A stretch of DNA of 64,000 bases from Octopus bimaculoides (lineage: Eukaryota): assembly GCF_001194135.2 (NCBI RefSeq), contig NC_068984.1, positions 141,415,518-141,479,517 of the forward strand, in the 5' to 3' direction. The first letter of the stretch is position 1. Every line of letters begins with the position of its first letter. Of this stretch, positions 34,515 to 54,800 are shown piece by piece. The notes beneath the pieces are model-generated. The model did not search any database. It saw only the letters and a program-made list of their open reading frames with translations, and was not told the DNA's origin. The translations under genes were made by a program, and so were the position numbers.

Positions 34515-34555
<41 letters not shown>

Positions 34556-34772
34556 ACAAACACACACACCTGTACACACCTTGATACTTGTGCAGAGAAC
34601 CATTTCCATGTGTATACCATTTGATCTTGTTTGTTAATTTAATCTGCTCCAATTTAAAATTGAGAATCCATATTGAATCAGGTCAGTTGTTTGATCATCC
34701 AGAATATTCTAGAATCTTATCCTTCTCTTATTTTTTTTTCTCTCTCTCTCTCTCTCTCTCCTCGTTATTTAG

Positions 34773-35170
34773 GAACTTCAGCGGCAGAAATCTAATTATG
34801 AGCGGCAGAAGAAGCATGCAGTGCACCTTCGGATGCAGCAAGAAGAGGCTGAGAGAGAGCTGAAGCAACCAAAGAGTATTGACAGCCAGCGAGAGGAGAT
34901 GCGGCGGTTGAACATGATTGTCAAAGAGAAGCAAGACCAGGAGATGATACGACAGCGTCTGCAAGGGGACCAGGACGAAGGAAAAGTTGAAAGCCAGCAG
35001 CTGCCAGATGCAGTGCAACAACAACAACAACAACAGTTGGCAGAAGTGCAGAAATCTGAAGAGCTGAGAAGGGTTGAACCTGTCAGTCGAGTGCCGCTAC
35101 AGGAGAAAGAGAAAGCAACGGTGAGAAAGGACAAAACGGAGGAGACACTGAAGACCAAAGTAGACAATAA
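34773..35170 (+). CDS. Coding exon, Q/E/K-rich coiled coil (ELQRQKSNYERQKK...KTKVDN), phase 0-2; possible alternative donor at 35121
   Basis: (CT)n tract + ttatttag acceptor; 132 open codons; donor AA|gtatgt at 35171; internal ACG|gtgaga at 35121. Confidence 0.85.
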
Positions 35171-35654
35171 GTATGTTCTTTGGGTTTTTCCCCCTTCACC
35201 AATTTCTTCTCACAAAACTTTCATCTCCATTGCCCCAAATCTTTGCCTTTATTACTGTTTTTTTTTCTTTTTTNNNNNNNNNNNNNNNNNNNNNNNNNNN
35301 NNNNNNNNNNNNNNNNNNNNNNNNNNNNNNNNNNNNNNNNNNNNNNNNNNNNNNNNNNNNNNNNNNNNNNNNNNNNNNNNNNNNNNNNNNNNNNNNNNNN
35401 NNNNNNNNNNNNNNNNNNNNNNNNNNNNNNNNNNNNNNNNNNNNNNNNNNNNNNNNNNNNNNNNNNNNNNNNNNNNNNNNNNNNNNNNNNCCCCCCCCCC
35501 CCATTTATGAACTCTTTTATTTGTTCTTCAGAATTATTTGTGAAGATTTTTTTTCTCCCCTACTTTTATTCTCATCTCTGTGTTTCTCTCTCTATCTTTC
35601 TACTGGACTCTATTCATTTTTCATCTCTCTCTCTCTTCTCAGTTGTTCCCTTAA

Positions 35655-35875
35655 CCCTTTCGTTACCGTATTTCTGTTGAGATGCTCTGTGTTTCTTTCA
35701 ATTACTTTGAATATAACAAAGAATTTAGTAAAATAACTTAGTTATCATTCAGCTAGTGTTAGGAACTTAAATTGTGACTAAGGTTTGGTGAAAGATATTA
35801 ATTCAAAACTTATGAAAACAAGACATTTGTACTACAGAGCCAGAGCCGGTTTCATCCAGGTTGTTATCGAAAGGG
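35655..35875 (-). mobile_element. piggyBac-like MITE, family 1, opposite orientation
   Basis: TTAA at 35651-35654 and 35876-35879; the body is the reverse complement of 8606-8823. Confidence 0.8.
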
Positions 35876-36086
35876 TTAAGAATTGTTTCTCTATTATATA
35901 TTTTAAATCAATATCTCTCAACGTTTTTACCCTTATGGGCTCCTTTCATTCCTATTTTCCTTTACTGGACCTTCCATAGCCATTCATAGTATATTAAACT
36001 ACATCCTGCTGTATTTTCATTATGAAATATCATGAGGAGTTGCATAAATAAAAAAAAAAGTGTAGTTCAGAAATATAATCAATTTA

Positions 36087-36246
36087 CAGTTCTATATTTA
36101 ATAACATCGAAAAATACCTTAGGAATGAGAACCCAGGTTTGAAATTTCCCCAAGACACCTGATGACGGCTGGAGGGTATATCAGCCAAAACGTTGTGTTA
36201 ACAACAAAAAAGATGAGCACAAATATCCGTCAAATGTAAATAATGT
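36087..36246 (+). mobile_element. 5'-truncated copy of the same hammerhead-bearing element (motif 36154-36199, G12 to A)
   Basis: Near-identical to 47.39-47.52 kb; 14-nt direct repeat ATATAATCAATTTA at 36073-36086 and 36247-36260. Confidence 0.85.
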
Positions 36247-36674
36247 ATATAATCAATTTATTGGAGATAAAAACTTTAACAACAAAATCTTATTTGGATC
36301 CCAAAGGGCCACATGAGACCTGATTGAGAACCTTTGACTTAAATATTTCACTTTCTCTGATCCCTTGATCTTCTCTACCTCTCTGTCTCTCTCTCTCTCT
36401 CATAGGACTCCTCATTGCTATTCTACTTCCTCTTCATTTCTCTCTTTCTCACTTGTTTCACTGAAATCCCTTTGATTCCCTCCTCATCATCCATCTGTCC
36501 TCCATGTATCTCCAGAGAAATTTCACCAACCTTCACTTTTATAAATTCCTCCTCCATGTTTTTCCAGATTTTGTTTTTCTTCATTTCTTCCTTTCTGGAA
36601 ACCCTGGCAACATCTTTTTTTTTTAACATCACCTGAGGTCACATCTTTCTGTATCAGTTTTTCACTTTGCAGCA

Positions 36675-37064: not shown

Positions 37065-38478
37065 NNNNNNNNNNNNNNNNNNNNNNNNNNNNNNNNNNNN
37101 NNNNNNNNNNNNNNNNNNNNNNNNNNNNNNNNNNNNNNNNNNNNNNNNNNNNNNNNNNNNNNNNNNNNNNNNNNNNNNNNNNNNNNNNNNNNNNNNNNNN
37201 NNNNNNNNNNNNNNNNNNNNNNNNNNNNNNNNNNNNNNNNNNNNNNNNNNNNNNNNNNNNNNNNNNNNNNNNNNNNNNNNNNNNNNNNNNNNNNNNNNNN
37301 NNNNNNNNNNNNNNNNNNNNNNNNNNNNNNNNNNNNNNNNNNNNNNNNNNNNNNNNNNNNNNNNNNNNNNNNNNNNNNNNNNNNNNNNNNNNNNNNNNNN
37401 NNNNNNNNNNNNNNNNNNNNNNNNNNNNNNNNNNNNNNNNNNNNNNNNNNNNNNNNNNNNNNNNNNNNNNNNNNNNNNNNNNGAAGTGGTGTACAGATAT
37501 TGTATATTGAAAAAAAGGTGGCAGTCAGAATTTTGGATAATTCTTTATTAGCACTTTTGTTGATTTAATTTCTATCTTGAAGAGTTCGGTTAAAAGAATG
37601 AAAGCGGTAATAAAGAATTATCCAGAATTCTGACTTCCTCCTTTTTATATATATATATATACACATTTGCCTGGTGTATCTTGACACTTTCAATTGAATA
37701 ATGCAGAATGTTCATGAGTGCATATGTGCGTGTGTGCATGTTAAATGTGAGGAGAGAGTGGAGTGCTCAGTTTGTTGTTTCTAGTTTGTGGGTGTAAAAA
37801 AAAAAAAAAGAGAAATGTCAGTGTTGTAATGGAGTGATCCTCCAACTCTGAATACATGGGTGTGTGGGTTTGAGTAAGAAGGATAGTTTATGTGCAATAT
37901 AGGAAGCAAACGTCCGACCAACCAACCAACCCCAAAAAAAACCAAATGGGCTAGAATTTAATTGAATTACTCCTGTTTTCCTTCTCCAAGAATCAATAAA
38001 GAAAGACTGAAGAAGAATGCTGTAGATAATTGCCTCAGGTATATTTCTCATCTACTAACTCTGTAGAAGAATCTTGGCTTTTTAGATCTAATTCCAACCT
38101 TGAAGTATGTTGCTCTCCACCTTTTTTCCCCACACTGATTAATGCAGGATTTGAAACCCTACCCACTCTCTCTTTTCCTATCATTTCCTCGTCCATGGCA
38201 ATCTTTTATGATGTTTGTGATACTTCATTTTTTAACACTCAACTTCTACTATGTATTTGTTTTTGCCAATAAAACATTATTATTATTATTATTATTAGGC
38301 GGTGAGCTGGCTGAATGGTTTGCATGCCGTGCGAAATGCTTAGCGTAGTGCTAACCACACCACAAAATGTACTGGGTGCTCTTAACGTGGCACCAGCGCC
38401 AGTATCAGAATGTGAAGATGGAAGAAATACCGTCAAGCATTCTTCTGGGCATGCTAGCAATTCTTTCAGCTTGCTGCC

Positions 38479-38516
<38 letters not shown>

Positions 38517-38726: not shown

Positions 38727-38759
<33 letters not shown>

Positions 38760-46615: not shown

Positions 46616-47130
46616 AATCCTATTTTTATTCTTTATGTTTATTGTTTTTAGCTTTTGTAATTTTTGAAATGAGAATGTTTCCCACTCTTTTCAGTTTTCT
46701 CACTTCTCTTTCATACACAAGCACATACGTCCCATACACACACACACACACACACACACACGTATCTATATGCACAAACACACTACGCAACCACTTCCTT
46801 TGAGGCCCACATACAACAGACACTATGGCCATTCCATTTCTCTGATATTGTTTCTCATTAACTAAAGATTATAACTCCACCTGCTAATTCTTATAGAATC
46901 TATTTGCCTAGGGCAAAGGGCAAACTATGTCTTGAGGTTTAAAATTAATTAATTATTAGCTTAATGATGTATAATCATTAGTATATCGGTAGTATAGAAC
47001 TGGTGATTATATCAGTGATAAATTTGTTGTAAATAATATTACTAGGTAATACGGTTCTATATCTAAGAGATGAGGAATTATGTACATTATTTGCATTTGA
47101 CAGATATTTGTCCTCATCTTGTTTGTTGTT

Positions 47131-47176
47131 AACACAACATTTCGGCTGATATAGCCTCCAGCCTTCATCAGGTGTG
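47131..47176 (-). ncRNA. Minimal type I hammerhead ribozyme motif (inverted arm)
   Basis: Reverse complement CACAC-CTGATGA-A-GGCTG..CAGCC-GAAA-TG-TT-GTGTT; the ACGT palindrome is altered to ATGT. Confidence 0.8.
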
Positions 47177-47429
47177 TTGGGGAAATTTCAAACCTGGGTT
47201 TTCATTCCTAAGGTATTTTTCGATGTTTTTATTATCATTATTCAGCTTACTGCCTGGAATTGAACTGAGAATCTTGGGGTTAATAGCCCGCACTCTTAAC
47301 CACTACACCCATAGTGGTTAAGAGTGCGGGCTACTAACCCCAAGATTCCGAGTTTGATTCCAGGCAGTAACCTGAATAATAATAATAATGATAACATTGA
47401 ACGAGAACCCAGGTTCGAAATTTCCCCAA

Positions 47430-47475
47430 GACACCTGATGAAGGCTGGAGGGTATATCAGCCGAAACGTTATGTT
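47430..47475 (+). ncRNA. Minimal type I hammerhead ribozyme motif (Penelope-type)
   Basis: GACAC-CTGATGA-A-GGCTG(10-nt loop)CAGCC-GAAA-CG-TT-ATGTT; all core nucleotides present; stem I mismatch at position 1.1. Confidence 0.8.
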
Positions 47476-49748
47476 AACAACAAACAGGATGAGGACAAAT
47501 ATCCGTCAAATGTAAATAATGTAAATATTACTAGGGTCCAGAGTCTTGAATTGTTTTTCTTTTCTCACATCTAAAATTGGCCATTGAGTTCCTGAATAAA
47601 ATTGGTAGGTGGGGTGGCCAGGAAGGAATTTATACATACATGTGTGATCACATGACTGACCAAACTTTCAGATGTTGTCACACATTGCTTGTCACAGTGT
47701 GCTTTGCATTGTTTTCACCTTCAAATGACACCATCCTTCTGGCCATGCAAGCTGGCCAACATGCTCCACTAATCGAAATGGGGGCTGGAACACCAAGAAA
47801 TGAAGTGTTTTGTTCAAGAATGCAGCGCTGCCTGGCCTAGGAACTGAACCCTCAATCTAGCAACCATGAATACAACAGCCTAACCACTAGGCCATGCACC
47901 TTCACATACATATGTATTTATGTATTAATTAAATATATATAAATCACTTTTTAAAATTCTCTCTACAGATTTTCTATAGAAATTAGAGCCAGTACTGAAA
48001 GTTACACTATTTCATACACAAATATGTCTATGTAAACAATGTGACCAAGGATAGTAAAATAGGTAAAGGGTGTACATACATATTTCAAGTGTTATTGCTC
48101 TTTCTTCAGTGCCACATCTAACCCATTAACTATTTGCAAACACATTGCTTAACTAACCACTAAATTTAGCAGTCTAACACAATTGGATCTACCAATTTTA
48201 CATATTAAGCACATTCCTAGCAATTAGTACATACATATTAATTACTGATAGTGACACCATATGTACTAGCAGCAATTAATATGTAAATAAATGTTTGTGT
48301 GTATGTCTATGCACACACATAAAGACCCAGAGGCCCTTTTATATGTAGTGTACCTTATGAATTGAATTGTGTTTCACGAATTTGCATTTTGTTGCTTAAC
48401 GAACTTTTTTTGAAACTTGCAGCAACAGAAAATACGGCTTAGGAACACGTGCTGTGAAAGATGAGAAGAAGACTACAATCACCACAACAACCTCATCAAC
48501 TAGTCAATACCGAAGAATTGGATCTGCAGAACCAAGCAAAATCAAAAAACAGACCTCAGACTCGGCATCAGCTTCGAATCATCTTCAGAAAAAGTAAATG
48601 CATTGGCAGCATATTTAGAAATGGTGGAGATGTGTGAGGCGGAGTGGTGGTGTAGGATATGAATGAATAGTGTATGGTGGCAATGACATGGGATACCCAC
48701 AATCACCACCACCACCACCACCACCACCACCATCATAATGTGTGTATATGTATGTCATCATCATCATCATCCAGTGTTTTAAATCCGGGTTTTGTCCCTG
48801 TTAATGAGGGTTGCCGGATCTACTTCAATGCCATAGCAACTGAAGTAGGCAGGTAGGCTCACCCCAACCTTTGGGCTGGCTGGTGCCCATTCCCCTTTGC
48901 TATCATGAGGCTTTTTTGGAGCTGGATTTTCTACAGGGAGCATGCCCTTGCTTACCCCCAACCTCAGTTTCTAGACATGAGTGATCCTGAGACGAAGGCC
49001 TCTACCATGATTTTTAAGAAATATGGTGGGAAACTAGCTTAGGAAGGCAGGGACGCTACTCCCTGAGATCCCTTTTGGAGACCCCCCCACTACCTATATA
49101 TGTATGTTTGTGTGTGTATGTATATATATATATATATGTATCTGTGTATACAATGGAAGAAGTGATCAAGACAATAGAACAGTATTTCCACTCACTACTC
49201 TGCAGTATCAAATTATTCCATCCTTAGTTCTTTCTCCGGTTAGCATTGTATTTCATCCTGCTCTTGGTCATTATACTAATTATGCAGAGACATTGGTCCA
49301 ATTTTTGTCAGATTCTGTGAAACTAACCAACCTGTTCTAGAATGGCAGTTAGACACTAAAAGGTGATCACACACAAACACACACGATCAGATAGTGTGAT
49401 GTACATCTCTTCCTCTCATTACTTTAGAAAAGTTTTTGTGTTTAATTAAGAAATCATTACATAATTAGATAATCGCTTAAGTAATTTTATACGGAGTAAT
49501 ATTAGATGAGCTGTTATCTCTATTGGCAACACAGACCAATGAAATCTTCTCCATGTGGTTGCATGACATGCTAAAAATAGTAGCCAAATCTCCATGTCAC
49601 ATTCAACCATCTTGAAATACTTGATTGCATAGTATTAGATATTTTGTCTGACACGAAGGTGAGATAGTCATGGCTGGAACCCCTTTGTTCATAGGTTCTC
49701 TTGAGCAGGGATCAGCTGGAGTGAACAGATATATTATAGGCATTTTAA

Positions 49749-50489: not shown

Positions 50490-51058
50490 CATACATACAT
50501 ACATACAGGGTGTCCACAAAGTCTGGGTACATGGGGATTAACACATACTTTAAGAAATTATTATTTCTTATATTTAATTGTTTATGTTATGATTTTATTT
50601 ACTCCATGTACCCAGACCTTGTGGACACCCTGTATAATGTGTGTGTGTGTGTTTGGTTGGTGTTAGGAAGGGCATCCAGCCATAAAAGCCATGCCAAAAC
50701 AGACACAGAAGCCTGGTGCAGGCTCCAGCCTGGTCAGCTCCTGTCAAACCATCCCACCCATGCCAGCATAGAAGGAGCACGTTAAACAATGATGATGATG
50801 ATGATTGATATAGGGATTGTTTGAAGTCGTCTACAGATTAAGAAAGACGAGGTAGAATTTTGGATTACTATGAATAATTCTCCAAAATTCTGACTTCCTT
50901 ATTTTTCTTAGCACATATATTTAAGTTTGACACAGGAAGTCAGTCATATGAATGGTATTGTATTTGTAATTAGAGTTGTGTACTCTAGGTTTAAATGTGA
51001 CTCCATCTGTGTGTGCGTACAACTCCTTAAAAGAAATCTGTTATGTTCCTTTCTCCAG

Positions 51059-51365
51059 CGGTGTTCCGGATGAAAATATGAACCCGTCTCCTGCTTCGTC
51101 AAACGCTCCCAGTCGCAGTTCTTCAACCAGTTCGATACACAGCAGCACCAATGACAAAACAGTTAGCAAAACGCTGTCTGGCAGCCGTCTACGGTTAGAC
51201 AAGAGTGCAACCTCTACGTCTTCAGCTTCTTCAAATGTCGTCCGCCGTACGAAACCAGGAGAGAAGTCGGGCAGCAGCCAGGTGTCGAGCACCAATTCCA
51301 AAATTGCTGTGACGACTTCAAGTCGGTTACATATGTCAGGAACCAAATCAAACCATGTAACGCCG
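51059..51365 (+). CDS. Ser/Thr-rich exon (S-GVPDENMNPSPASS...NHVTP), phase 2-0
   Basis: Acceptor ttatgttcctttctccag; long open frame (ORF track 50976-51383); donor CCG|gttagt at 51366. Confidence 0.8.
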
Positions 51366-51769
51366 GTTAGTATTATCAACTGACCGCCAGATGGTCACCA
51401 GTTCTGGTTGTTGACATTTAAGTGGCATTATTGTTATTGTTATTGTTTTGTTTGTTTGTTGTTATTGGGACTTTCAGATCTTGATTGTGGTTAAATTCTA
51501 TTTTCTTCAGCCACTAATTCATTCTTAACTTAATTAATCACTTGTTTAAACTTAATTAATTTGTGTTAAACTTTCATCTTTTCTTCTATTCTCTTCTCTT
51601 ATTTTGTTTCTTTTTTTTTTTTTTTGGTTTATTTCTTCACTGTCAAAAGAAGAATGTTATGAAATATTTATTTATTTATTTATATTGTTTAATCTGTCCA
51701 TCGTCTTTCTTCCTACTATCTGGTCTCTTTTGTATTTCATTTCCTGATGTTGAGGTTATTTAAACAAGT

Positions 51770-51800
<31 letters not shown>

Positions 51801-54800
51801 GTTTGTGTGTATGTCTGTGAATGTGCATCATTACAACATTTTAGTTTTTCTGCTTCAACATTTCCAATACTCATTGGTTACAAGCTTTAAAGATCAATGC
51901 TGCAGTTGTTATTGATTACAAATATTGACTTCAGAACGCTACTGCAACAGAGCACATCGCTCTCCAAGTTCTCTCACAAAAATGTTTCTATATTCTCTTC
52001 CTTATAAACATAGTGTTTGTTTCCAAACGGTATAATATTTCCGCTTGATGGTTCTGTGGTTTCGAGGTTTCATGTTCAATCTCAAAGTGTCTGCTATGAT
52101 ATCGTTAGGTCGTTGAGCACTTTTATGAGTGCAGTTTGGTAGATGGAAACTCTCTGGCAAGACTGTTCAAGGGATTGTGTTTGTTTTTGCGTGGTAGACC
52201 TAATTGGTTGTTTGGTGTAACATCACCACCTGGGTCATAAATACCTTTATTAGAGCCCACCCTGTTGTAAGTTCATTTGGGACAACTAACCTCTAAGCAA
52301 AACTACCCCAGCTGATAATTGTGTATCTACTCATGTAGCTTTACAGGTGTCTACAAAACGTTTAATTTACTACTTCCATGCTGCAGAGCTGACTCGATAG
52401 TAGCGCTTTGATGCTACATGTCACATTCTGAATTACATGTGGCAGACTAGCTTCACTTCTCTCAGTCCCATGTGTTACATAAACTAAAATATCCCCTTTT
52501 CTGTTGGGTACCTTGTCACACCATACCCCAGTTCCATGTAATACATTATCACAACTTACCTCTGTTCTCTGTGATACACTATTGTAACTTACTCCAGTTC
52601 TCTAGGGCTACTTATCCCTCACCGGTATTTGCCTTTCCACTGTTTGAAGGCTACCTGTTCTTGGTTTCGGTTCTCTCTAACGCTAACTCACCTCAGTTTT
52701 ATCCCTCATTCTACAACTGTTCTTATTAGAGGGACATCACCTCTACATACATTGACACTGTCTCGCATACAAAAGGATCTCATCTATGTAAAACAGTGAA
52801 TTGAAATATTTCAGAGATTATCTACGCAATTAATATACAAAATTCCCCCTCTGGGGATGGTCAGAATTCTAAAACAGTCATGTGGGGCTTTCTCAATGGC
52901 ATGCCAATGTAAAATTATGTTAAAGTGTTTCCTTGGTGGAGCCTGACTGATGATGAGTCGTGTCTCATGTGGTTTGTTTCTTGGAACAAAAAAGAAAATG
53001 TTACCTCTGCCAAGGGAGATAATTCGGTAATGTTAGATAATCAAAATGATTGGAAAATAATGACTCAAAGCAGATAGTAGTGGATCTTGCCTTTAAATCC
53101 AACTATGAAAGTAACAAACATGTTTCAGCTTTATTAAAACTCTTCAGTGAAATATATTCAACTCAGTTTGCAAAACTTAGAAGTGATCAGTATTACAGAA
53201 GTAGAAAGAGCCATTATTAATGAATATTACTAGAAATATCCACTTGGCCAAACTTCTATAATCCATAATCACCTGAAAACCCTCTGATTCTGTTTTTATG
53301 GTTTGCTTTGGTTTTTGAGGTACTCCGAGTGAAGCTAGAGTCACCAACTATTATATGCGAGAGCAGTAATTCAGTGATCTACCGTTAAATTGTATAGGAA
53401 AGGAGTTTACCTAAAACCTTGCTCTAGCAGATTCACACTAAAAGTATTTAGATACCATTGCATACTGTACACACACACACACACATAAAGATAGATAGAT
53501 AGATACAAGCACCTTACAACCATGAAGAATTGATACTGAGGATGTGCGGAGGTGTTGATTTTCAGGTCAGAAGTCTTTGTCGGCGTGGAAGTAGTCAACA
53601 GCTTTAACATACTTGTCTCCTTGTCTGTCTGTCTGTCCCGTTTGTGTGTCTCCACTCCATCAATACATTAACAGCAGTATAAAACACAGCATCAGCTGCT
53701 GCAAGGAACCATACTTAATCTCTGTGTTAGTGGTGTGTCCTGCAGAATGGTTACAATTCTCAGCAGATGATTTTACAGTTAATTTGAAAGTTTATTTAAA
53801 TCGAAACCATTACTTGGCCTGTGAATTGTCTCAATTAGTAGAGTCTTGTGGTATACAATTTCAACTCCTTATATTTTGATTTCATATCTTACCAAAGTCG
53901 GCTTTGCTTTTTGTTATTCTAGAGTTGATGAAATAATTTCCAGTCAAGATATGGGCTTGATTTTAAATCAACCAAACACTTCCCCAAAGTTTGAAGTCTT
54001 GAAAACCAGTCTCCAACTTCACTGTCCTATTTCTCGCACTTTAAAAAATTTAAGGTTTTATATCTCTATGCAGAATTTAGAAACGCCTACCCTGAACTTA
54101 TGTCTACACCTACCCACATCTACCCCTGACTGACCTGTTTTGTCCCTGACCCGAACATGTTCTTCCCTCAGACCTACATGTCATAACCAGCTTACATTTT
54201 GCCTCACTGACCTACGTGTACCACTGTGCTCAGCATGTTCCCTAACCAGACTACATGTGCTATCACTGAACTACATACAGTTTTACTTGACTCAAGTCCT
54301 GTCAACCTACAAATACTGAAACTGAGCCCCAGCCACCCCTTTCTCTGCAGTGTGATTGGGACTGGAAAGGTGTGCAAGGCTTGCCTCAACACCTTTGACT
54401 AGAACATTAAAAAAGAAAAAAAAAAAGACGTTGCTTTCTGGGATGCGAGTTCACAGTTCCAATGAAGGTTCGCATAAATTTACATGTAATGTTTCTTTTA
54501 GAATAGTTTTCACATTGTGGTTTTGAACTTTTAAAAGCTTATACCACATGTAGAATTGCATTCATGTTGTTAGCAGTCTACCAGGCAGCTGTCTTACATG
54601 TGACCCTTTGTGACTCTCATCAAAGTCTCAAAAATATTCCATTCCTTGCATAATTTCTTGAGTGACCAAAGATCACATTGTAAACAAAGTTAAACAGATA
54701 AGTTCTTGTTTGTGGTTGCCACCTCTAGACTGATCAAAAAGTTATATGGACAGGGAATAAAGATATAATGCTGTGGTGTAACATGGAGGCACATGGCCTA

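What the first reader, a model, noticed from the sequence alone, without database searches (positions are those of the whole stretch)
47035..47535. tRNA-promoter short element carrying a Penelope-type hammerhead ribozyme, inserted as a head-to-head dimer
Seen: each arm reads tRNA-like head (A box, 7-nt anticodon-like loop CTA(T/C)TAA, B box GTTC(A/G)ATTCC), then an (AAT)n-like linker, then hammerhead GACAC-CUGAUGA-A-GGCUG/CAGCC-GAAA-CG-UU-GUGUU (consensus of three copies), then an AT-rich end. The arms are fused head to head and flanked by a 12-nt direct repeat. The minus arm carries a 36-nt 3' extension (47047-47082) that the plus arm lacks. Established: Penelope-like elements carry minimal type I hammerheads whose helix III is a short palindrome (here ACGU) needing dimerisation. 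They often have inverted 5' repeats and an optional short 3' tail. An extra A after A9 is tolerated in natural hammerheads, and Schistosoma Sm-alpha is a precedent for a hammerhead-containing repeat. Inference: this is a pol III SINE that parasitises Penelope RT/GIY-YIG machinery rather than a LINE, possibly using self-cleavage to define its RNA ends. I know of no description of this in cephalopods but cannot search.
Basis: partly seen in the sequence, partly recalled or inferred. Interest (0 to 1): 0.9.

Follow-up and report, generated by a model that had tools for sequence, protein, structure and literature searches.

The report
tRNA-headed retroposon with Penelope-type hammerhead
A short mobile element with a tRNA-like front end and the ribozyme-bearing tail typical of Penelope-like retrotransposons is inserted here as a head-to-head double copy; the insertion is real and is probably a Penelope-dependent SINE, an architecture otherwise described mainly for the schistosome Sm-alpha repeats.

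Summary
Positions 47047-47523 are two inverted arms (85% identical overall, about 91% in ungapped blocks) flanked by a perfect 12-nt target-site duplication (TSD). Each arm reads tRNA-like head, (AAT)n linker, about 125-145 nt module with a minimal type I hammerhead. Only the minus arm has a 36-nt tail.

A third, 5'-truncated copy (36087-36246) has a 14-nt TSD. A related-species contig shows the orthologous empty site, so the family is mobile.

The hammerhead has all four published signatures of Penelope-like-element (PLE) minimal hammerheads. A full descriptor hits once here and never in 300 simulated windows. Rfam's hammerhead models do not hit.

The head is not called by ARAGORN or Rfam. 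It still fits the tRNA register as well as three conventional SINE heads in the window (16/16 and 15/16 invariants).

The inverted 5' copy, the one-sided tail and the palindromic junction match published PLE insertion anatomy.

Not shown: pol III transcription, ribozyme activity, the PLE partner, the true 5' end.

Main rival: a truncated inverted pseudo-LTR pair of a longer PLE.

"Self-cleavage defines the RNA ends" is not supported, because all copies run 48-53 nt past the cleavage site.

Verdict: new variant of a known kind, moderate interest.

The parts
47035..47046 (.). Left target-site duplication AATATTACTAGG of the dimer insertion
   Evidence: Perfect 12-nt direct repeat exactly at the outer edges of the arms (D6).
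47047..47082 (-). 36-nt 'tail' at the 3' end of the inverted (minus) arm; sense reading CATAATTCCTCATCTCTTAGATATAGAACCGTATTA
   Evidence: Present in the minus arm only. Its distal 14 nt recur, inverted, at the left end of copy 3 (12/14, p about 4e-4). Matches the PLE 'tail' of 30-40 bp found at one end or on one inverted pLTR.
47083..47226 (-). Minus-arm 3' module (PLE pLTR-like), ending ...AAATAATGTA
   Evidence: nhmmer profile of the three copies, E=4.6e-49; alignment.
47131..47176 (-). Minus-arm minimal hammerhead CACAC-CUGAUGA-A-GGCUGG..UCAGCC-GAAA-UG-UU-GUGUU (C15.2>U breaks the ACGU palindrome)
   Evidence: one substitution short of the full descriptor.
47227..47245 (-). Minus-arm (AAT)n-like linker
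47246..47311 (-). Minus-arm tRNA-like head (tRNA positions ~7-72, or ~4-72 if the first 3 bp of the central palindrome are counted), including the 6-nt junction loop
   Evidence: 16/16 tRNA invariants in canonical register, rank 1 of 38,081 positions. A box GGGTGTAGTGG 8/9, B box AGTTCAATTCC 7/9.
47312..47371 (+). Plus-arm tRNA-like head (tRNA positions 13-72; A14=47313, anticodon-like loop 47331-47337, T loop 47353-47359)
   Evidence: 15/16 invariants; colinear with three resident SINE heads. Not called by ARAGORN or Rfam.
47372..47398 (+). Plus-arm (AAT)5 linker; it has an 11-nt deletion relative to the other two copies
47399..47523 (+). Plus-arm 3' module, ending ...AAATAATGTA, without a tail
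   Evidence: nhmmer E=7.6e-44.
47430..47475 (+). Plus-arm minimal type I hammerhead. Helix I 47430-34/47471-75, core CUGAUGA 47435-41, bulge A 47442, helix II 47443-62, GAAA 47463-66, C15.2 G16.2 47467-68, U16.1 47469, U17 47470. Predicted cut between 47470 and 47471.
   Evidence: The only full descriptor hit in the window, 0/300 simulated windows; exact pattern. Helix II recovered by MFE folding.
47524..47535 (.). Right target-site duplication of the dimer
   Evidence: D6.
36073..36086 (.). Left TSD ATATAATCAATTTA of copy 3
   Evidence: Present once in the related-species contig L002.
36087..36100 (-). Inverted remnant of the tail at the left end of copy 3
   Evidence: 12/14 match to tail positions 18-31. 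It is part of the inserted DNA, because it is absent from the empty site.
36101..36246 (+). Copy 3: 5'-truncated direct copy (end of linker plus 3' module). Hammerhead at 36154-36199, with G12>A and a C bulge.
   Evidence: BLAST 93.6%; nhmmer E=1.8e-49.
36247..36260 (.). Right TSD of copy 3

Best explanation
A non-autonomous retroposon integrated by the RT/GIY-YIG machinery of a Penelope-like element (PLE).

Structure of the unit:
- a tRNA-derived head with A and B boxes;
- an (AAT)n tract that looks like the old tail of a simple tRNA-SINE;
- a pLTR-like 3' module of about 145 nt carrying a PLE-type minimal hammerhead, plus an optional 36-nt tail.

Shown:
- The element is mobile. It has TSDs of 12 and 14 nt, and an orthologous empty site exists for copy 3.
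- Head and hammerhead module move as one unit.
- The hammerhead motif is non-random and of the PLE type.
- The insertion architecture is the one described for PLEs.

Inferred life cycle:
1. A master copy is transcribed from the internal pol III promoter. There is no T4 terminator anywhere in the 215-265 nt sense strand.
2. The PLE RT recognises the 3' module in trans, as pLTRs alone suffice to mobilise foreign cargo in Adineta vaga.
3. The endonuclease makes nicks 12-14 bp apart, and first-strand cDNA is primed on the RNA 3' end including the tail. This gives the minus arm.
4. At or near the RNA 5' end (about tRNA position 4) the cDNA 3' end ...CTA-CACCCA-TAG snaps back on itself (3-bp stem, 6-nt loop) and copies itself. 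This gives the plus arm and a head-to-head palindrome.
5. Resolution leaves the tail on one side only.

Copy 3 is either the same structure after deletion of the unstable palindrome centre, or a template-switch product.

The hammerhead, which needs two sense copies to form helix III, is most likely kept as part of the PLE-recognised or processed 3' module. It did not set the ends of these copies.
For: - TSDs and arms.
- Empty site in L002...CAGAAAT-TCAATCAATCCA-TTGCAGTTAGAAGCTTTAAA against the window ...CAGAA[ATATAATCAATTTA]{insert}[ATATAATCAATTTA]TTGGAGATAAAAACTTTAAC.
- Hammerhead: exact pattern 1 vs 0 in shuffles; descriptor 1 vs 0/300. All four PLE min-HHR signatures of PMC4209133 are present.
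- PLE anatomy. PMC8557442 describes an inverted 5'-truncated copy at the 5' end and a 30-40 bp tail at one end. PMC3846280 describes a tail on one inverted pLTR, pLTRs of 181-218 bp, palindromic junctions read as self-priming, and trans-mobilisation by pLTRs alone. Here the arms are 215 nt, the tail is 36 nt, and the same tail sequence recurs at a second independent insertion.
- tRNA head: top-ranked register score, equal to three bona fide SINE heads. It is as similar to those heads (24-33/52) as they are to each other (25-35/52). A box 8/9 and B box 7/9.
- No TTTT in any copy.
- The only 5' end available lies within about 4-13 nt of the expected pol III start.
- (AAT)n is a native retroposon tail in this genome.
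- The three copies are 91.5-93% identical pairwise, which fits one burst.
Against: - Only three copies from two insertions, so there is a single independent 5' end. A sharp SINE 5' boundary is not demonstrated.
- Rfam tRNA and all Rfam hammerhead models fail even at E<=10 on short stretches, and ARAGORN finds nothing.
- The anticodon and T stems keep only 3/5 pairs each.
- There is no compensatory covariation, and folding is no better than shuffles (z about 0).
- There is no PLE RT/EN in the window, and no partner 3' end to compare with.
- No external copies were found in any searchable collection.
- Metazoan min-HHRs have only weak in vitro activity (PMC4209133).
- Simple snap-back does not by itself explain copy 3.
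Confidence: 0.55

Rival explanations
1. The arms are just a severely 5'-truncated insertion (an inverted pLTR plus a direct pLTR) of a longer PLE, either autonomous or carrying cargo. Its roughly 200-nt pLTR/3' region happens to contain an old tRNA-SINE insertion with its (AAT)n tail. On this reading there is no pol III-driven SINE family.
For: - PMC4209133 reports that most min-HHRs are dispersed single motifs 'probably related to truncated PLEs', and describes dual min-HHRs 100-700 bp apart on opposite strands. Here the two are about 300 bp apart.
- The arm length of 215 nt equals typical pLTR lengths of 181-218 bp.
- If the junction arose by snap-back, the two inner ends are one event, so the coincidence of both arms ending in the head carries little weight.
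- Copy 3 shows that the module moves without the head.
Against: - The single truncation point falls within about 4-13 nt of the start of the tRNA-like unit, which is unlikely for a random break in a kb-scale template.
- The head sits exactly where a SINE head sits, keeps A and B boxes as good as the resident SINEs, and the unit has no T4 run.
- There is no PLE coding sequence anywhere in the 64 kb.
Confidence: 0.3
2. A conventional LINE-dependent tRNA-SINE whose body contains a hammerhead-like motif of no relevance to mobilisation. The inverted dimer arose by twin priming or template switching during LINE-type target-primed reverse transcription (TPRT).
For: - TSDs of 12-14 nt and 5' truncation are also typical of LINE-mediated insertion.
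- The genome holds abundant conventional SINEs.
- No PLE partner was identified.
Against: - L1-type twin priming inverts a more 5' segment; it does not duplicate the same segment head to head.
- The one-sided templated 36-nt tail, recurring in two insertions, is described for PLEs and, according to PMC8557442, is not seen in non-LTR TPRT.
- The 3' end has no poly(A) and none of the (AAT)n tail that resident retroposons carry.
- The motif carries four PLE-specific min-HHR signatures.
Confidence: 0.07
3. A foldback or MITE-like DNA transposon with long terminal inverted repeats. Copy 3 would be an internal-deletion derivative that keeps both termini.
For: - The 477-bp unit has about 215-bp inverted arms and folds as a hairpin.
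- Copy 3 keeps sequence from both ends of the dimer.
Against: - The TSD length differs (12 vs 14 nt), and both lengths are long for cut-and-paste families.
- The inverted repeat does not reach the left terminus (36-nt asymmetric tail).
- The left ends of the two insertions are offset by 5 nt.
- The arms are 5'-truncated copies of a polar unit (head to tail), as in retroposition.
Confidence: 0.03
4. Chance motif or palindromic assembly artefact.
For: Rfam and ARAGORN are silent. The assembly is a draft with 3,052 Ns.
Against: - The descriptor is absent from 300 simulated windows.
- There are three copies with TSDs and an empty site.
- The arms differ by 15% including an indel, which an artefactual palindrome would not show.
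Confidence: 0.01

Closest known systems
Sm-alpha / Sj-alpha SINE-like repeats of Schistosoma (Ferbeyre et al. 1998; Laha et al. 2000; as summarised in PMC6765202)
   Same: A short non-coding retroposon with a pol III-type promoter followed by a type I hammerhead. The ribozyme is thought to act on multimeric transcripts.
   Different: Sm-alpha carries a canonical hammerhead, whereas this one is the helix-III-less PLE minimal variant. Sm-alpha is largely tandem or satellite-like, whereas these copies are dispersed, single or head to head, with PLE-type tail and TSDs.
[quoted passage not shown] 2017)
   Same: The same motif architecture (extra nucleotide after A9, G10.1-C11.1, palindromic 15.2-16.2, short helix I, longer helix II); occurrence as pairs on opposite strands a few hundred bp apart; dimer-dependent catalysis expected.
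   Different: Here the motif is joined to a tRNA-derived head rather than to an RT/EN ORF. There is no tandem pLTR arrangement in the window.
PLE insertion architecture and pLTR-mediated trans-mobilisation (Arkhipova et al. 2013, PMC3846280; Craig et al. 2021, PMC8557442)
   Same: An inverted 5'-truncated copy next to a direct copy, a palindromic junction, a 30-40 bp tail on one inverted arm, TSDs, and cargo mobilised by pLTR sequences alone.
   Different: TSDs are 12-14 nt here against 8-10 nt in the A. vaga examples. The cargo is a tRNA-like pol III unit, not a host gene. No microsatellite target; both targets are merely AT-rich.
Metazoan non-LTR retrozymes (Cervera & de la Pena 2020, PMC7229834; Li et al. 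2026 preprint 10.64898/2026.07.22.740005)
   Same: [quoted passage not shown]
   Different: Retrozymes are head-to-tail tandem arrays with classical type I hammerheads, expressed as circRNAs, and no tRNA-like head is described. Here there are no tandem copies, and the insertion ends do not coincide with the cleavage site.
Conventional tRNA-derived SINEs, e.g. the resident family GGCACATGGCTCAGTGGTTAGG... in this window
   Same: A tRNA-register head with A and B boxes of equal quality, short length, TSDs, 5' truncation.
   Different: The 3' part is a PLE-type hammerhead module with a tail instead of a LINE-derived tail or simple repeat. It inserts as an inverted dimer.

Membership tests
Hammerhead ribozyme, PLE-type minimal type I (min-HHR) | Catalytic core C3-A9 (CUGAUGA) and G12-A14 plus A15.1 (GAAA) | tested here: met
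   CUGAUGA is intact in all three copies. GAAA is intact in both arms; copy 3 has G12>A.
Hammerhead ribozyme, PLE-type minimal type I (min-HHR) | Helix II closed by G10.1-C11.1 and preceded by one unpaired nucleotide after A9 | tested here: met
   A (or C in copy 3) followed by GGCUGG...UCAGCC, 5-6 bp. Feature list from PMC4209133.
Hammerhead ribozyme, PLE-type minimal type I (min-HHR) | No helix III loop; palindromic 15.2-16.2 so that two motifs form helix III; U16.1-H17 cleavage site | tested here: met
   A-CG-U then U17 in the plus arm and copy 3. The minus arm has UG, a CpG decay.
Hammerhead ribozyme, PLE-type minimal type I (min-HHR) | Helix I of 4-5 bp, open (type I topology) | tested here: met
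   Consensus GACAC/GUGUU; 4 contiguous pairs in each of the plus and minus arms, 5 in copy 3.
Hammerhead ribozyme, PLE-type minimal type I (min-HHR) | Compensatory covariation in helices I and II across copies | tested here: inconclusive
   Three copies, 91.5-93% identical; only single-sided changes, none compensatory.
Hammerhead ribozyme, PLE-type minimal type I (min-HHR) | Self-cleavage, as a dimer | not testable with these tools
   Needs in vitro transcription of monomer and tandem dimer.
Rfam hammerhead families (Hammerhead_1 and relatives; canonical hammerheads) | Match to the covariance model | tested here: not met
   No hit at gathering score over 64 kb or at E<=10 over 801 nt. This is expected for a motif without helix III, but it means the motif is not a canonical type I hammerhead.
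Penelope-like element-type insertion (PLE-dependent) | Inverted 5'-truncated copy adjoining the 5' end of a direct copy, with a palindromic junction | tested here: met
   definition.
Penelope-like element-type insertion (PLE-dependent) | 30-40 bp tail at one end or on one inverted arm only | tested here: met
   36 nt at 47047-47082 only. A 14-nt remnant is at the same (left, inverted) side of copy 3.
Penelope-like element-type insertion (PLE-dependent) | Hammerhead in the terminal repeat | tested here: met
Penelope-like element-type insertion (PLE-dependent) | RT plus GIY-YIG ORF, or 3' sequence shared with an autonomous PLE of the same genome | not testable with these tools
   No RT/EN ORF in the window. 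The source genome is not searchable (searches returned nothing).
Penelope-like element-type insertion (PLE-dependent) | Direct pseudo-LTRs / partial tandem copies | tested here: not met
   No head-to-tail copies in the window. This is not required of 5'-truncated or non-autonomous insertions.
tRNA-derived SINE | tRNA-related head with internal A and B boxes | tested here: met
   16/16 and 15/16 invariants in canonical register, ranks 1-2 of 38,081 and equal to three resident SINE heads. A box 8/9 (minus arm), B box 7/9.
tRNA-derived SINE | Recognition as tRNA-like by a tRNA model | tested here: not met
   ARAGORN none. Rfam tRNA none, even with truncated-end scoring. The stems keep only 3/5 pairs each.
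tRNA-derived SINE | Defined 5' end at the pol III start, shared by many copies | tested here: inconclusive
   A single independent 5' end, at about tRNA position 4-13.
tRNA-derived SINE | Short, non-coding, TSD-flanked, demonstrably inserted | tested here: met
   215-265 nt per arm; TSDs of 12 and 14 nt; empty site.
tRNA-derived SINE | Pol III transcription; high copy number | not testable with these tools
   Only the absence of T4 runs could be checked. Three copies in 64 kb.
Metazoan non-LTR retrozyme | Head-to-tail tandem repeats of 170-400 nt with a classical type I hammerhead; circRNA | tested here: not met
   No tandem arrangement. The hammerhead is the minimal variant. circRNA is not testable.

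The most novel reading that the evidence does not exclude
This is a bona fide pol III-transcribed, tRNA-derived SINE family whose retrotransposition partner is a Penelope-like element rather than a LINE. The min-HHR-containing pLTR-like module would be the cis element the PLE RT recognises. If so, it is a compact (<500 bp) natural reporter showing the whole PLE integration product: templated one-sided tail, snap-back head-to-head junction, TSD.
Probability: 0.4. Interest if true: 0.7.

Novelty: new variant of a known kind. Interest (0 to 1): 0.5.

Why it matters
PLEs are the least understood major class of retrotransposons. Their integration mechanism (inverted and tandem copies, the "tail"), the role of their hammerheads, and whether they support SINE-like parasites are all open questions (PMC8557442, PMC4209133, PMC8969392).

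A tRNA-headed element with a PLE-type 3' module would extend the SINE concept to a second class of autonomous partner.

It would also link the long-isolated Sm-alpha case and the "retrozymes" to ordinary tRNA-SINEs.

And it would offer a very short substrate for dissecting PLE target-primed reverse transcription.

Two small mechanistic points already follow from these copies. First, the tail is templated by the element, because the same sequence occurs at two independent insertions. Second, the templates were not cut at the hammerhead site.

If the main rival is right, the locus is an ordinary truncated PLE insertion.

Tried and rejected
- Rfam at gathering score over the whole window, and at E<=10 on 801, 171 and 76 nt. 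No hammerhead and no tRNA. The only hits were sub-threshold miRNA-hairpin matches (MIR869, MIR4414, mir-609...), caused by the palindrome itself and rejected as generic.
- ARAGORN: nothing.
- External copies. Exact and degenerate DNA patterns in viral, metagenome (2 scans) and prokaryotic genome collections all returned zero. The 63-aa open frame across the plus arm, used as a protein handle, found no homologue. Exact-ORF look-ups for the plus-arm ORF and the right-flank ORF were not on record.
- Literal-sequence search of the literature: no relevant hit.
- Thermodynamic folding of the hammerhead region and of the monomer: z about 0, uninformative.
- Organism identification from three exon peptides: only two unnamed Logan proteins. 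One of them, however, led to the empty-site contig.
- A search for a PLE RT/EN in the window: none.
- Sm-alpha (PMC108972), Lunse 2017 (PMC5785218) and Pyatkov 2004 (PMC522041) are not held.
- Considered and rejected: MITE/foldback transposon, LINE twin priming, assembly artefact (see rivals).
Full report
**1. The observation**

- The repeat finder gives two inverted-repeat blocks: 47079-47207/47399-47527 (129 nt, 91%) and 47229-47305/47312-47388 (77 nt, 91%). They meet head to head around a 6-nt spacer CACCCA.
- A perfect 12-nt direct repeat AATATTACTAGG sits at 47035-47046 and 47524-47535, exactly at the outer edges.
- The two arms align at 85% identity with one 11-nt indel. The minus arm carries 36 extra nt at its 3' end (47047-47082).
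- A third copy at 36087-36246 (+) covers only the end of the linker and the 3' module, and has its own 14-nt duplication ATATAATCAATTTA.
- A three-copy profile finds no further copies in the window.
- The 15% divergence between the arms rules out a palindromic assembly artefact.

**2. Is it mobile?**

Yes. A peptide search with putative exons returned an unnamed ORF from a related species. Its 1,052-nt contig L002 (Logan SRR11869390) aligns to window 34550-36083 at 86%, 77% and 70% identity in successive blocks.

At its end, L002 carries a single copy of the target and then runs straight into the sequence that follows the second duplication in the window:
- L002: ...CAGAAAT-TCAATCAATCCA-TTGCAGTTAGAAGCTTTAAA
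- window: ...CAGAA[ATATAATCAATTTA]{160-nt insert}[ATATAATCAATTTA]TTGGAGATAAAAACTTTAAC

This is an orthologous empty site. It fixes the insert as 36087-36246 and shows that the 14 nt at its left end are inserted DNA.

**3. The hammerhead**

Rfam finds no hammerhead at gathering score or at E<=10 on 801 nt, so this is not a canonical hammerhead.

The motif is nevertheless non-random. The exact string occurs once against none in 100 shuffles. A full structural descriptor hits once, on the plus arm, and in 0 of 300 first-order Markov simulations of the window. The other two copies each miss the descriptor by one substitution.

Cervera & de la Pena (PMC4209133) list features of PLE minimal hammerheads that were not in their search descriptor:
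- a conserved G10.1-C11.1 pair;
- palindromic 15.2-16.2 with no helix III;
- a short helix I (4-5 bp) and a long helix II.

All are present here: CUGAUGA-A-GGCUGG...UCAGCC-GAAA-CG-U-U | GUGUU. The predicted cut in the plus arm lies between 47470 and 47471.

With three copies that are 91.5-93% identical there is no compensatory change to count. MFE folding recovers helix II but is no better than shuffles. Activity is therefore untested, and published metazoan min-HHRs cleave only weakly and only as dimers.

**4. The tRNA-like head**

ARAGORN and Rfam's tRNA model find nothing. That includes a run in which the stretch began at the fusion point so that a 5'-truncated match could score.

I therefore scored every A in the window, on both strands, for 16 universal tRNA invariants plus anticodon- and T-stem pairing. 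D-loop and variable-loop lengths were left free.
- The minus-arm head ranks first of 38,081 positions (16/16 invariants). The plus arm has 15/16.
- The other top scorers with many invariants (14-15 of 16) are three copies of a conventional tRNA-derived SINE (GGCACATGGCTCAGTGGTTAGG...) at 54788(+), 36853(+) and 30812(-). They serve as positive controls. Chance hits in the top eight reach 13/16; one lower-ranked chance hit reaches 14/16.
- The heads are colinear with those SINE heads. They are as similar to them (24-33/52) as those are to each other (25-35/52).
- The B box is equally good (7/9). If the 6-nt loop is assigned to the minus arm, its A box scores 8/9.
- The stems are decayed (3/5 pairs each), which explains why the tRNA models are silent.
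- No copy contains TTTT in the sense strand.

**5. Insertion anatomy**

Published PLE insertions show the following (PMC8557442; PMC3846280):
- 5' truncation;
- an inverted 5'-truncated copy next to the 5' end;
- pLTRs of about 180-220 bp;
- palindromic head-to-head junctions interpreted as self-priming;
- trans-mobilisation of unrelated cargo by pLTR sequences alone.

The dimer matches point for point: 215-nt arms, a 36-nt tail on one inverted arm, and a CTA-CACCCA-TAG junction.

The 14 nt at the left end of copy 3 are the reverse complement of tail positions 18-31 (12/14). Random window 14-mers reach that level at a rate of 3.9e-4. So the tail is a templated part of the element, and in both independent insertions it lies on the same, inverted side.

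**6. Mechanism (inferred)**

The most economical reading runs as follows.
- First-strand cDNA is primed on an RNA that ends with the tail. This gives the minus arm.
- Synthesis reaches about tRNA position 4.
- The cDNA 3' end snaps back (3-bp stem, 6-nt loop) and self-copies. This gives the plus arm.
- Endonuclease resolution removes the tail from that side.

Copy 3 needs either a later deletion of the palindrome centre or a template switch, with TAA microhomology at the junction.

All three copies continue 48-53 nt past the hammerhead cut to the same end ...AAATAATGT(A), and none begins at GUGUU. So self-cleavage did not define the ends of these templates.

The genomic head-to-head dimer cannot supply two sense ribozymes either. 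As one RNA it is a hairpin with a stem of about 215 bp (-322 kcal/mol, z = -31).

**7. What it is, and the main rival**

Head and module share one TSD, so they moved together by a PLE-type event.

What remains open is whether the template began at the tRNA-like head (a pol III SINE) or further upstream (a truncated PLE whose pLTR had captured a SINE). Under snap-back there is only one independent 5' end. Its position within about 4-13 nt of the tRNA start favours the SINE reading but does not prove it.

The window has no RT/EN ORF. No external copies could be obtained from any collection.

(AAT)n is the native 3' tail of another resident repeat family at seven or more loci. This suggests that the "linker" is the former tail of a simple tRNA-SINE onto which the PLE module was joined.

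**8. Comparison with the literature**

The closest precedents are:
- the schistosome Sm-alpha/Sj-alpha SINE-like elements, which combine a pol III promoter with a hammerhead (PMC6765202);
- PLE pLTR min-HHRs, including opposite-strand pairs 100-700 bp apart;

None of the papers found describes a tRNA-register head fused to a PLE minimal hammerhead module. Octopus repeat surveys list PLEs and hundreds of unclassified SINE families without mentioning ribozymes.

Repbase and Dfam could not be searched. The organism could not be named.

**9. Verdict**

I rate it a new variant of a known kind, of moderate interest mainly to transposon and ribozyme specialists.

Noticed in passing
window 54788-~55050 (+), 36853-~37060 (+), 30812-~30560 (-): Three copies of a conventional tRNA-derived SINE (5' GGCACATGGC(T/C)(T/C)AGTGGTTAG..., body ...CTTGAGCAAGACAC...CACGTTGCTCCAGTCCACTCAGCTGG...). 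ARAGORN and Rfam call none of them, yet they score 14-15/16 tRNA invariants.
   Followed up: partly
window (AAT)n tracts at 38481-38516(+), 38729-38758(+), 40241(+), 41179(+), 38276-38296(-), 13870-13887(-), 8137-8196(-): A resident repeat family ending ...GGAATTTGAACTCAGAAC...GCTAATGATTCTGCCAGCTCACCGCCT is followed by (AAT)n at seven or more loci. Several tracts are followed by CCTTTCTACTATAGGCACAAGGCCTGAAATTT. So (AAT)n is a native retroposon tail here, which may explain the (AAT)5 linker of the hammerhead element.
   Followed up: partly
window 47412-47420 (+); 47187-47195 (-); 36136-36144 (+): A second B-box-like motif GGTTCGAAA (GGTTTGAAA in the other two copies, a CpG decay) lies about 15 nt upstream of the hammerhead and about 100 nt downstream of the A box. 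It could be a vestige of a second tRNA-like unit or a functional TFIIIC site.
   Followed up: no
window 47028-47044 vs 47511-47527; 36070-36080 vs 36238-36246: Both target sites resemble the element's own 3' end. TGTAAATAATATTACTA upstream of or within the TSD compares with TGTAAATAATGTAAATA at the element end (82% over 17 nt, D3), and AAATATAAT lies at the copy-3 target. This suggests microhomology between target and template at the tail-less junction. The sample is too small to test.
   Followed up: no
window 34821-35165 (+); also 2922-3169 (+): Conserved coding exons. The peptide QQEEAERELKQPKSI...TKVDNK is 69% identical over the full 143-aa BLASTP alignment, and visibly higher within the exon part, to an ORF on a related-species contig (P0001/L002). 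A second exon matches L001 at 80% nt identity. If the S-rich ORF at 50976-51383 belongs to the same + strand gene, the dimer is intronic. It would then be transcribed as a long dsRNA hairpin, a potential Dicer or ADAR substrate.
   Followed up: partly
window 47229-47388: Rfam E-value scans give sub-threshold hits to many unrelated miRNA precursor families (MIR869 54 bits, MIR4414 53 bits, mir-609 49 bits, all far below gathering score). These are generic hairpin matches to the central palindrome, not evidence of a miRNA gene.
   Followed up: yes
window, whole: Draft-quality sequence: 3,052 Ns in many gaps, 35% GC, and dense (CA)n, (TA)n, (TC)n and (AAT)n microsatellites. No RT, endonuclease or transposase ORF of at least 75 aa anywhere.
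   Followed up: yes
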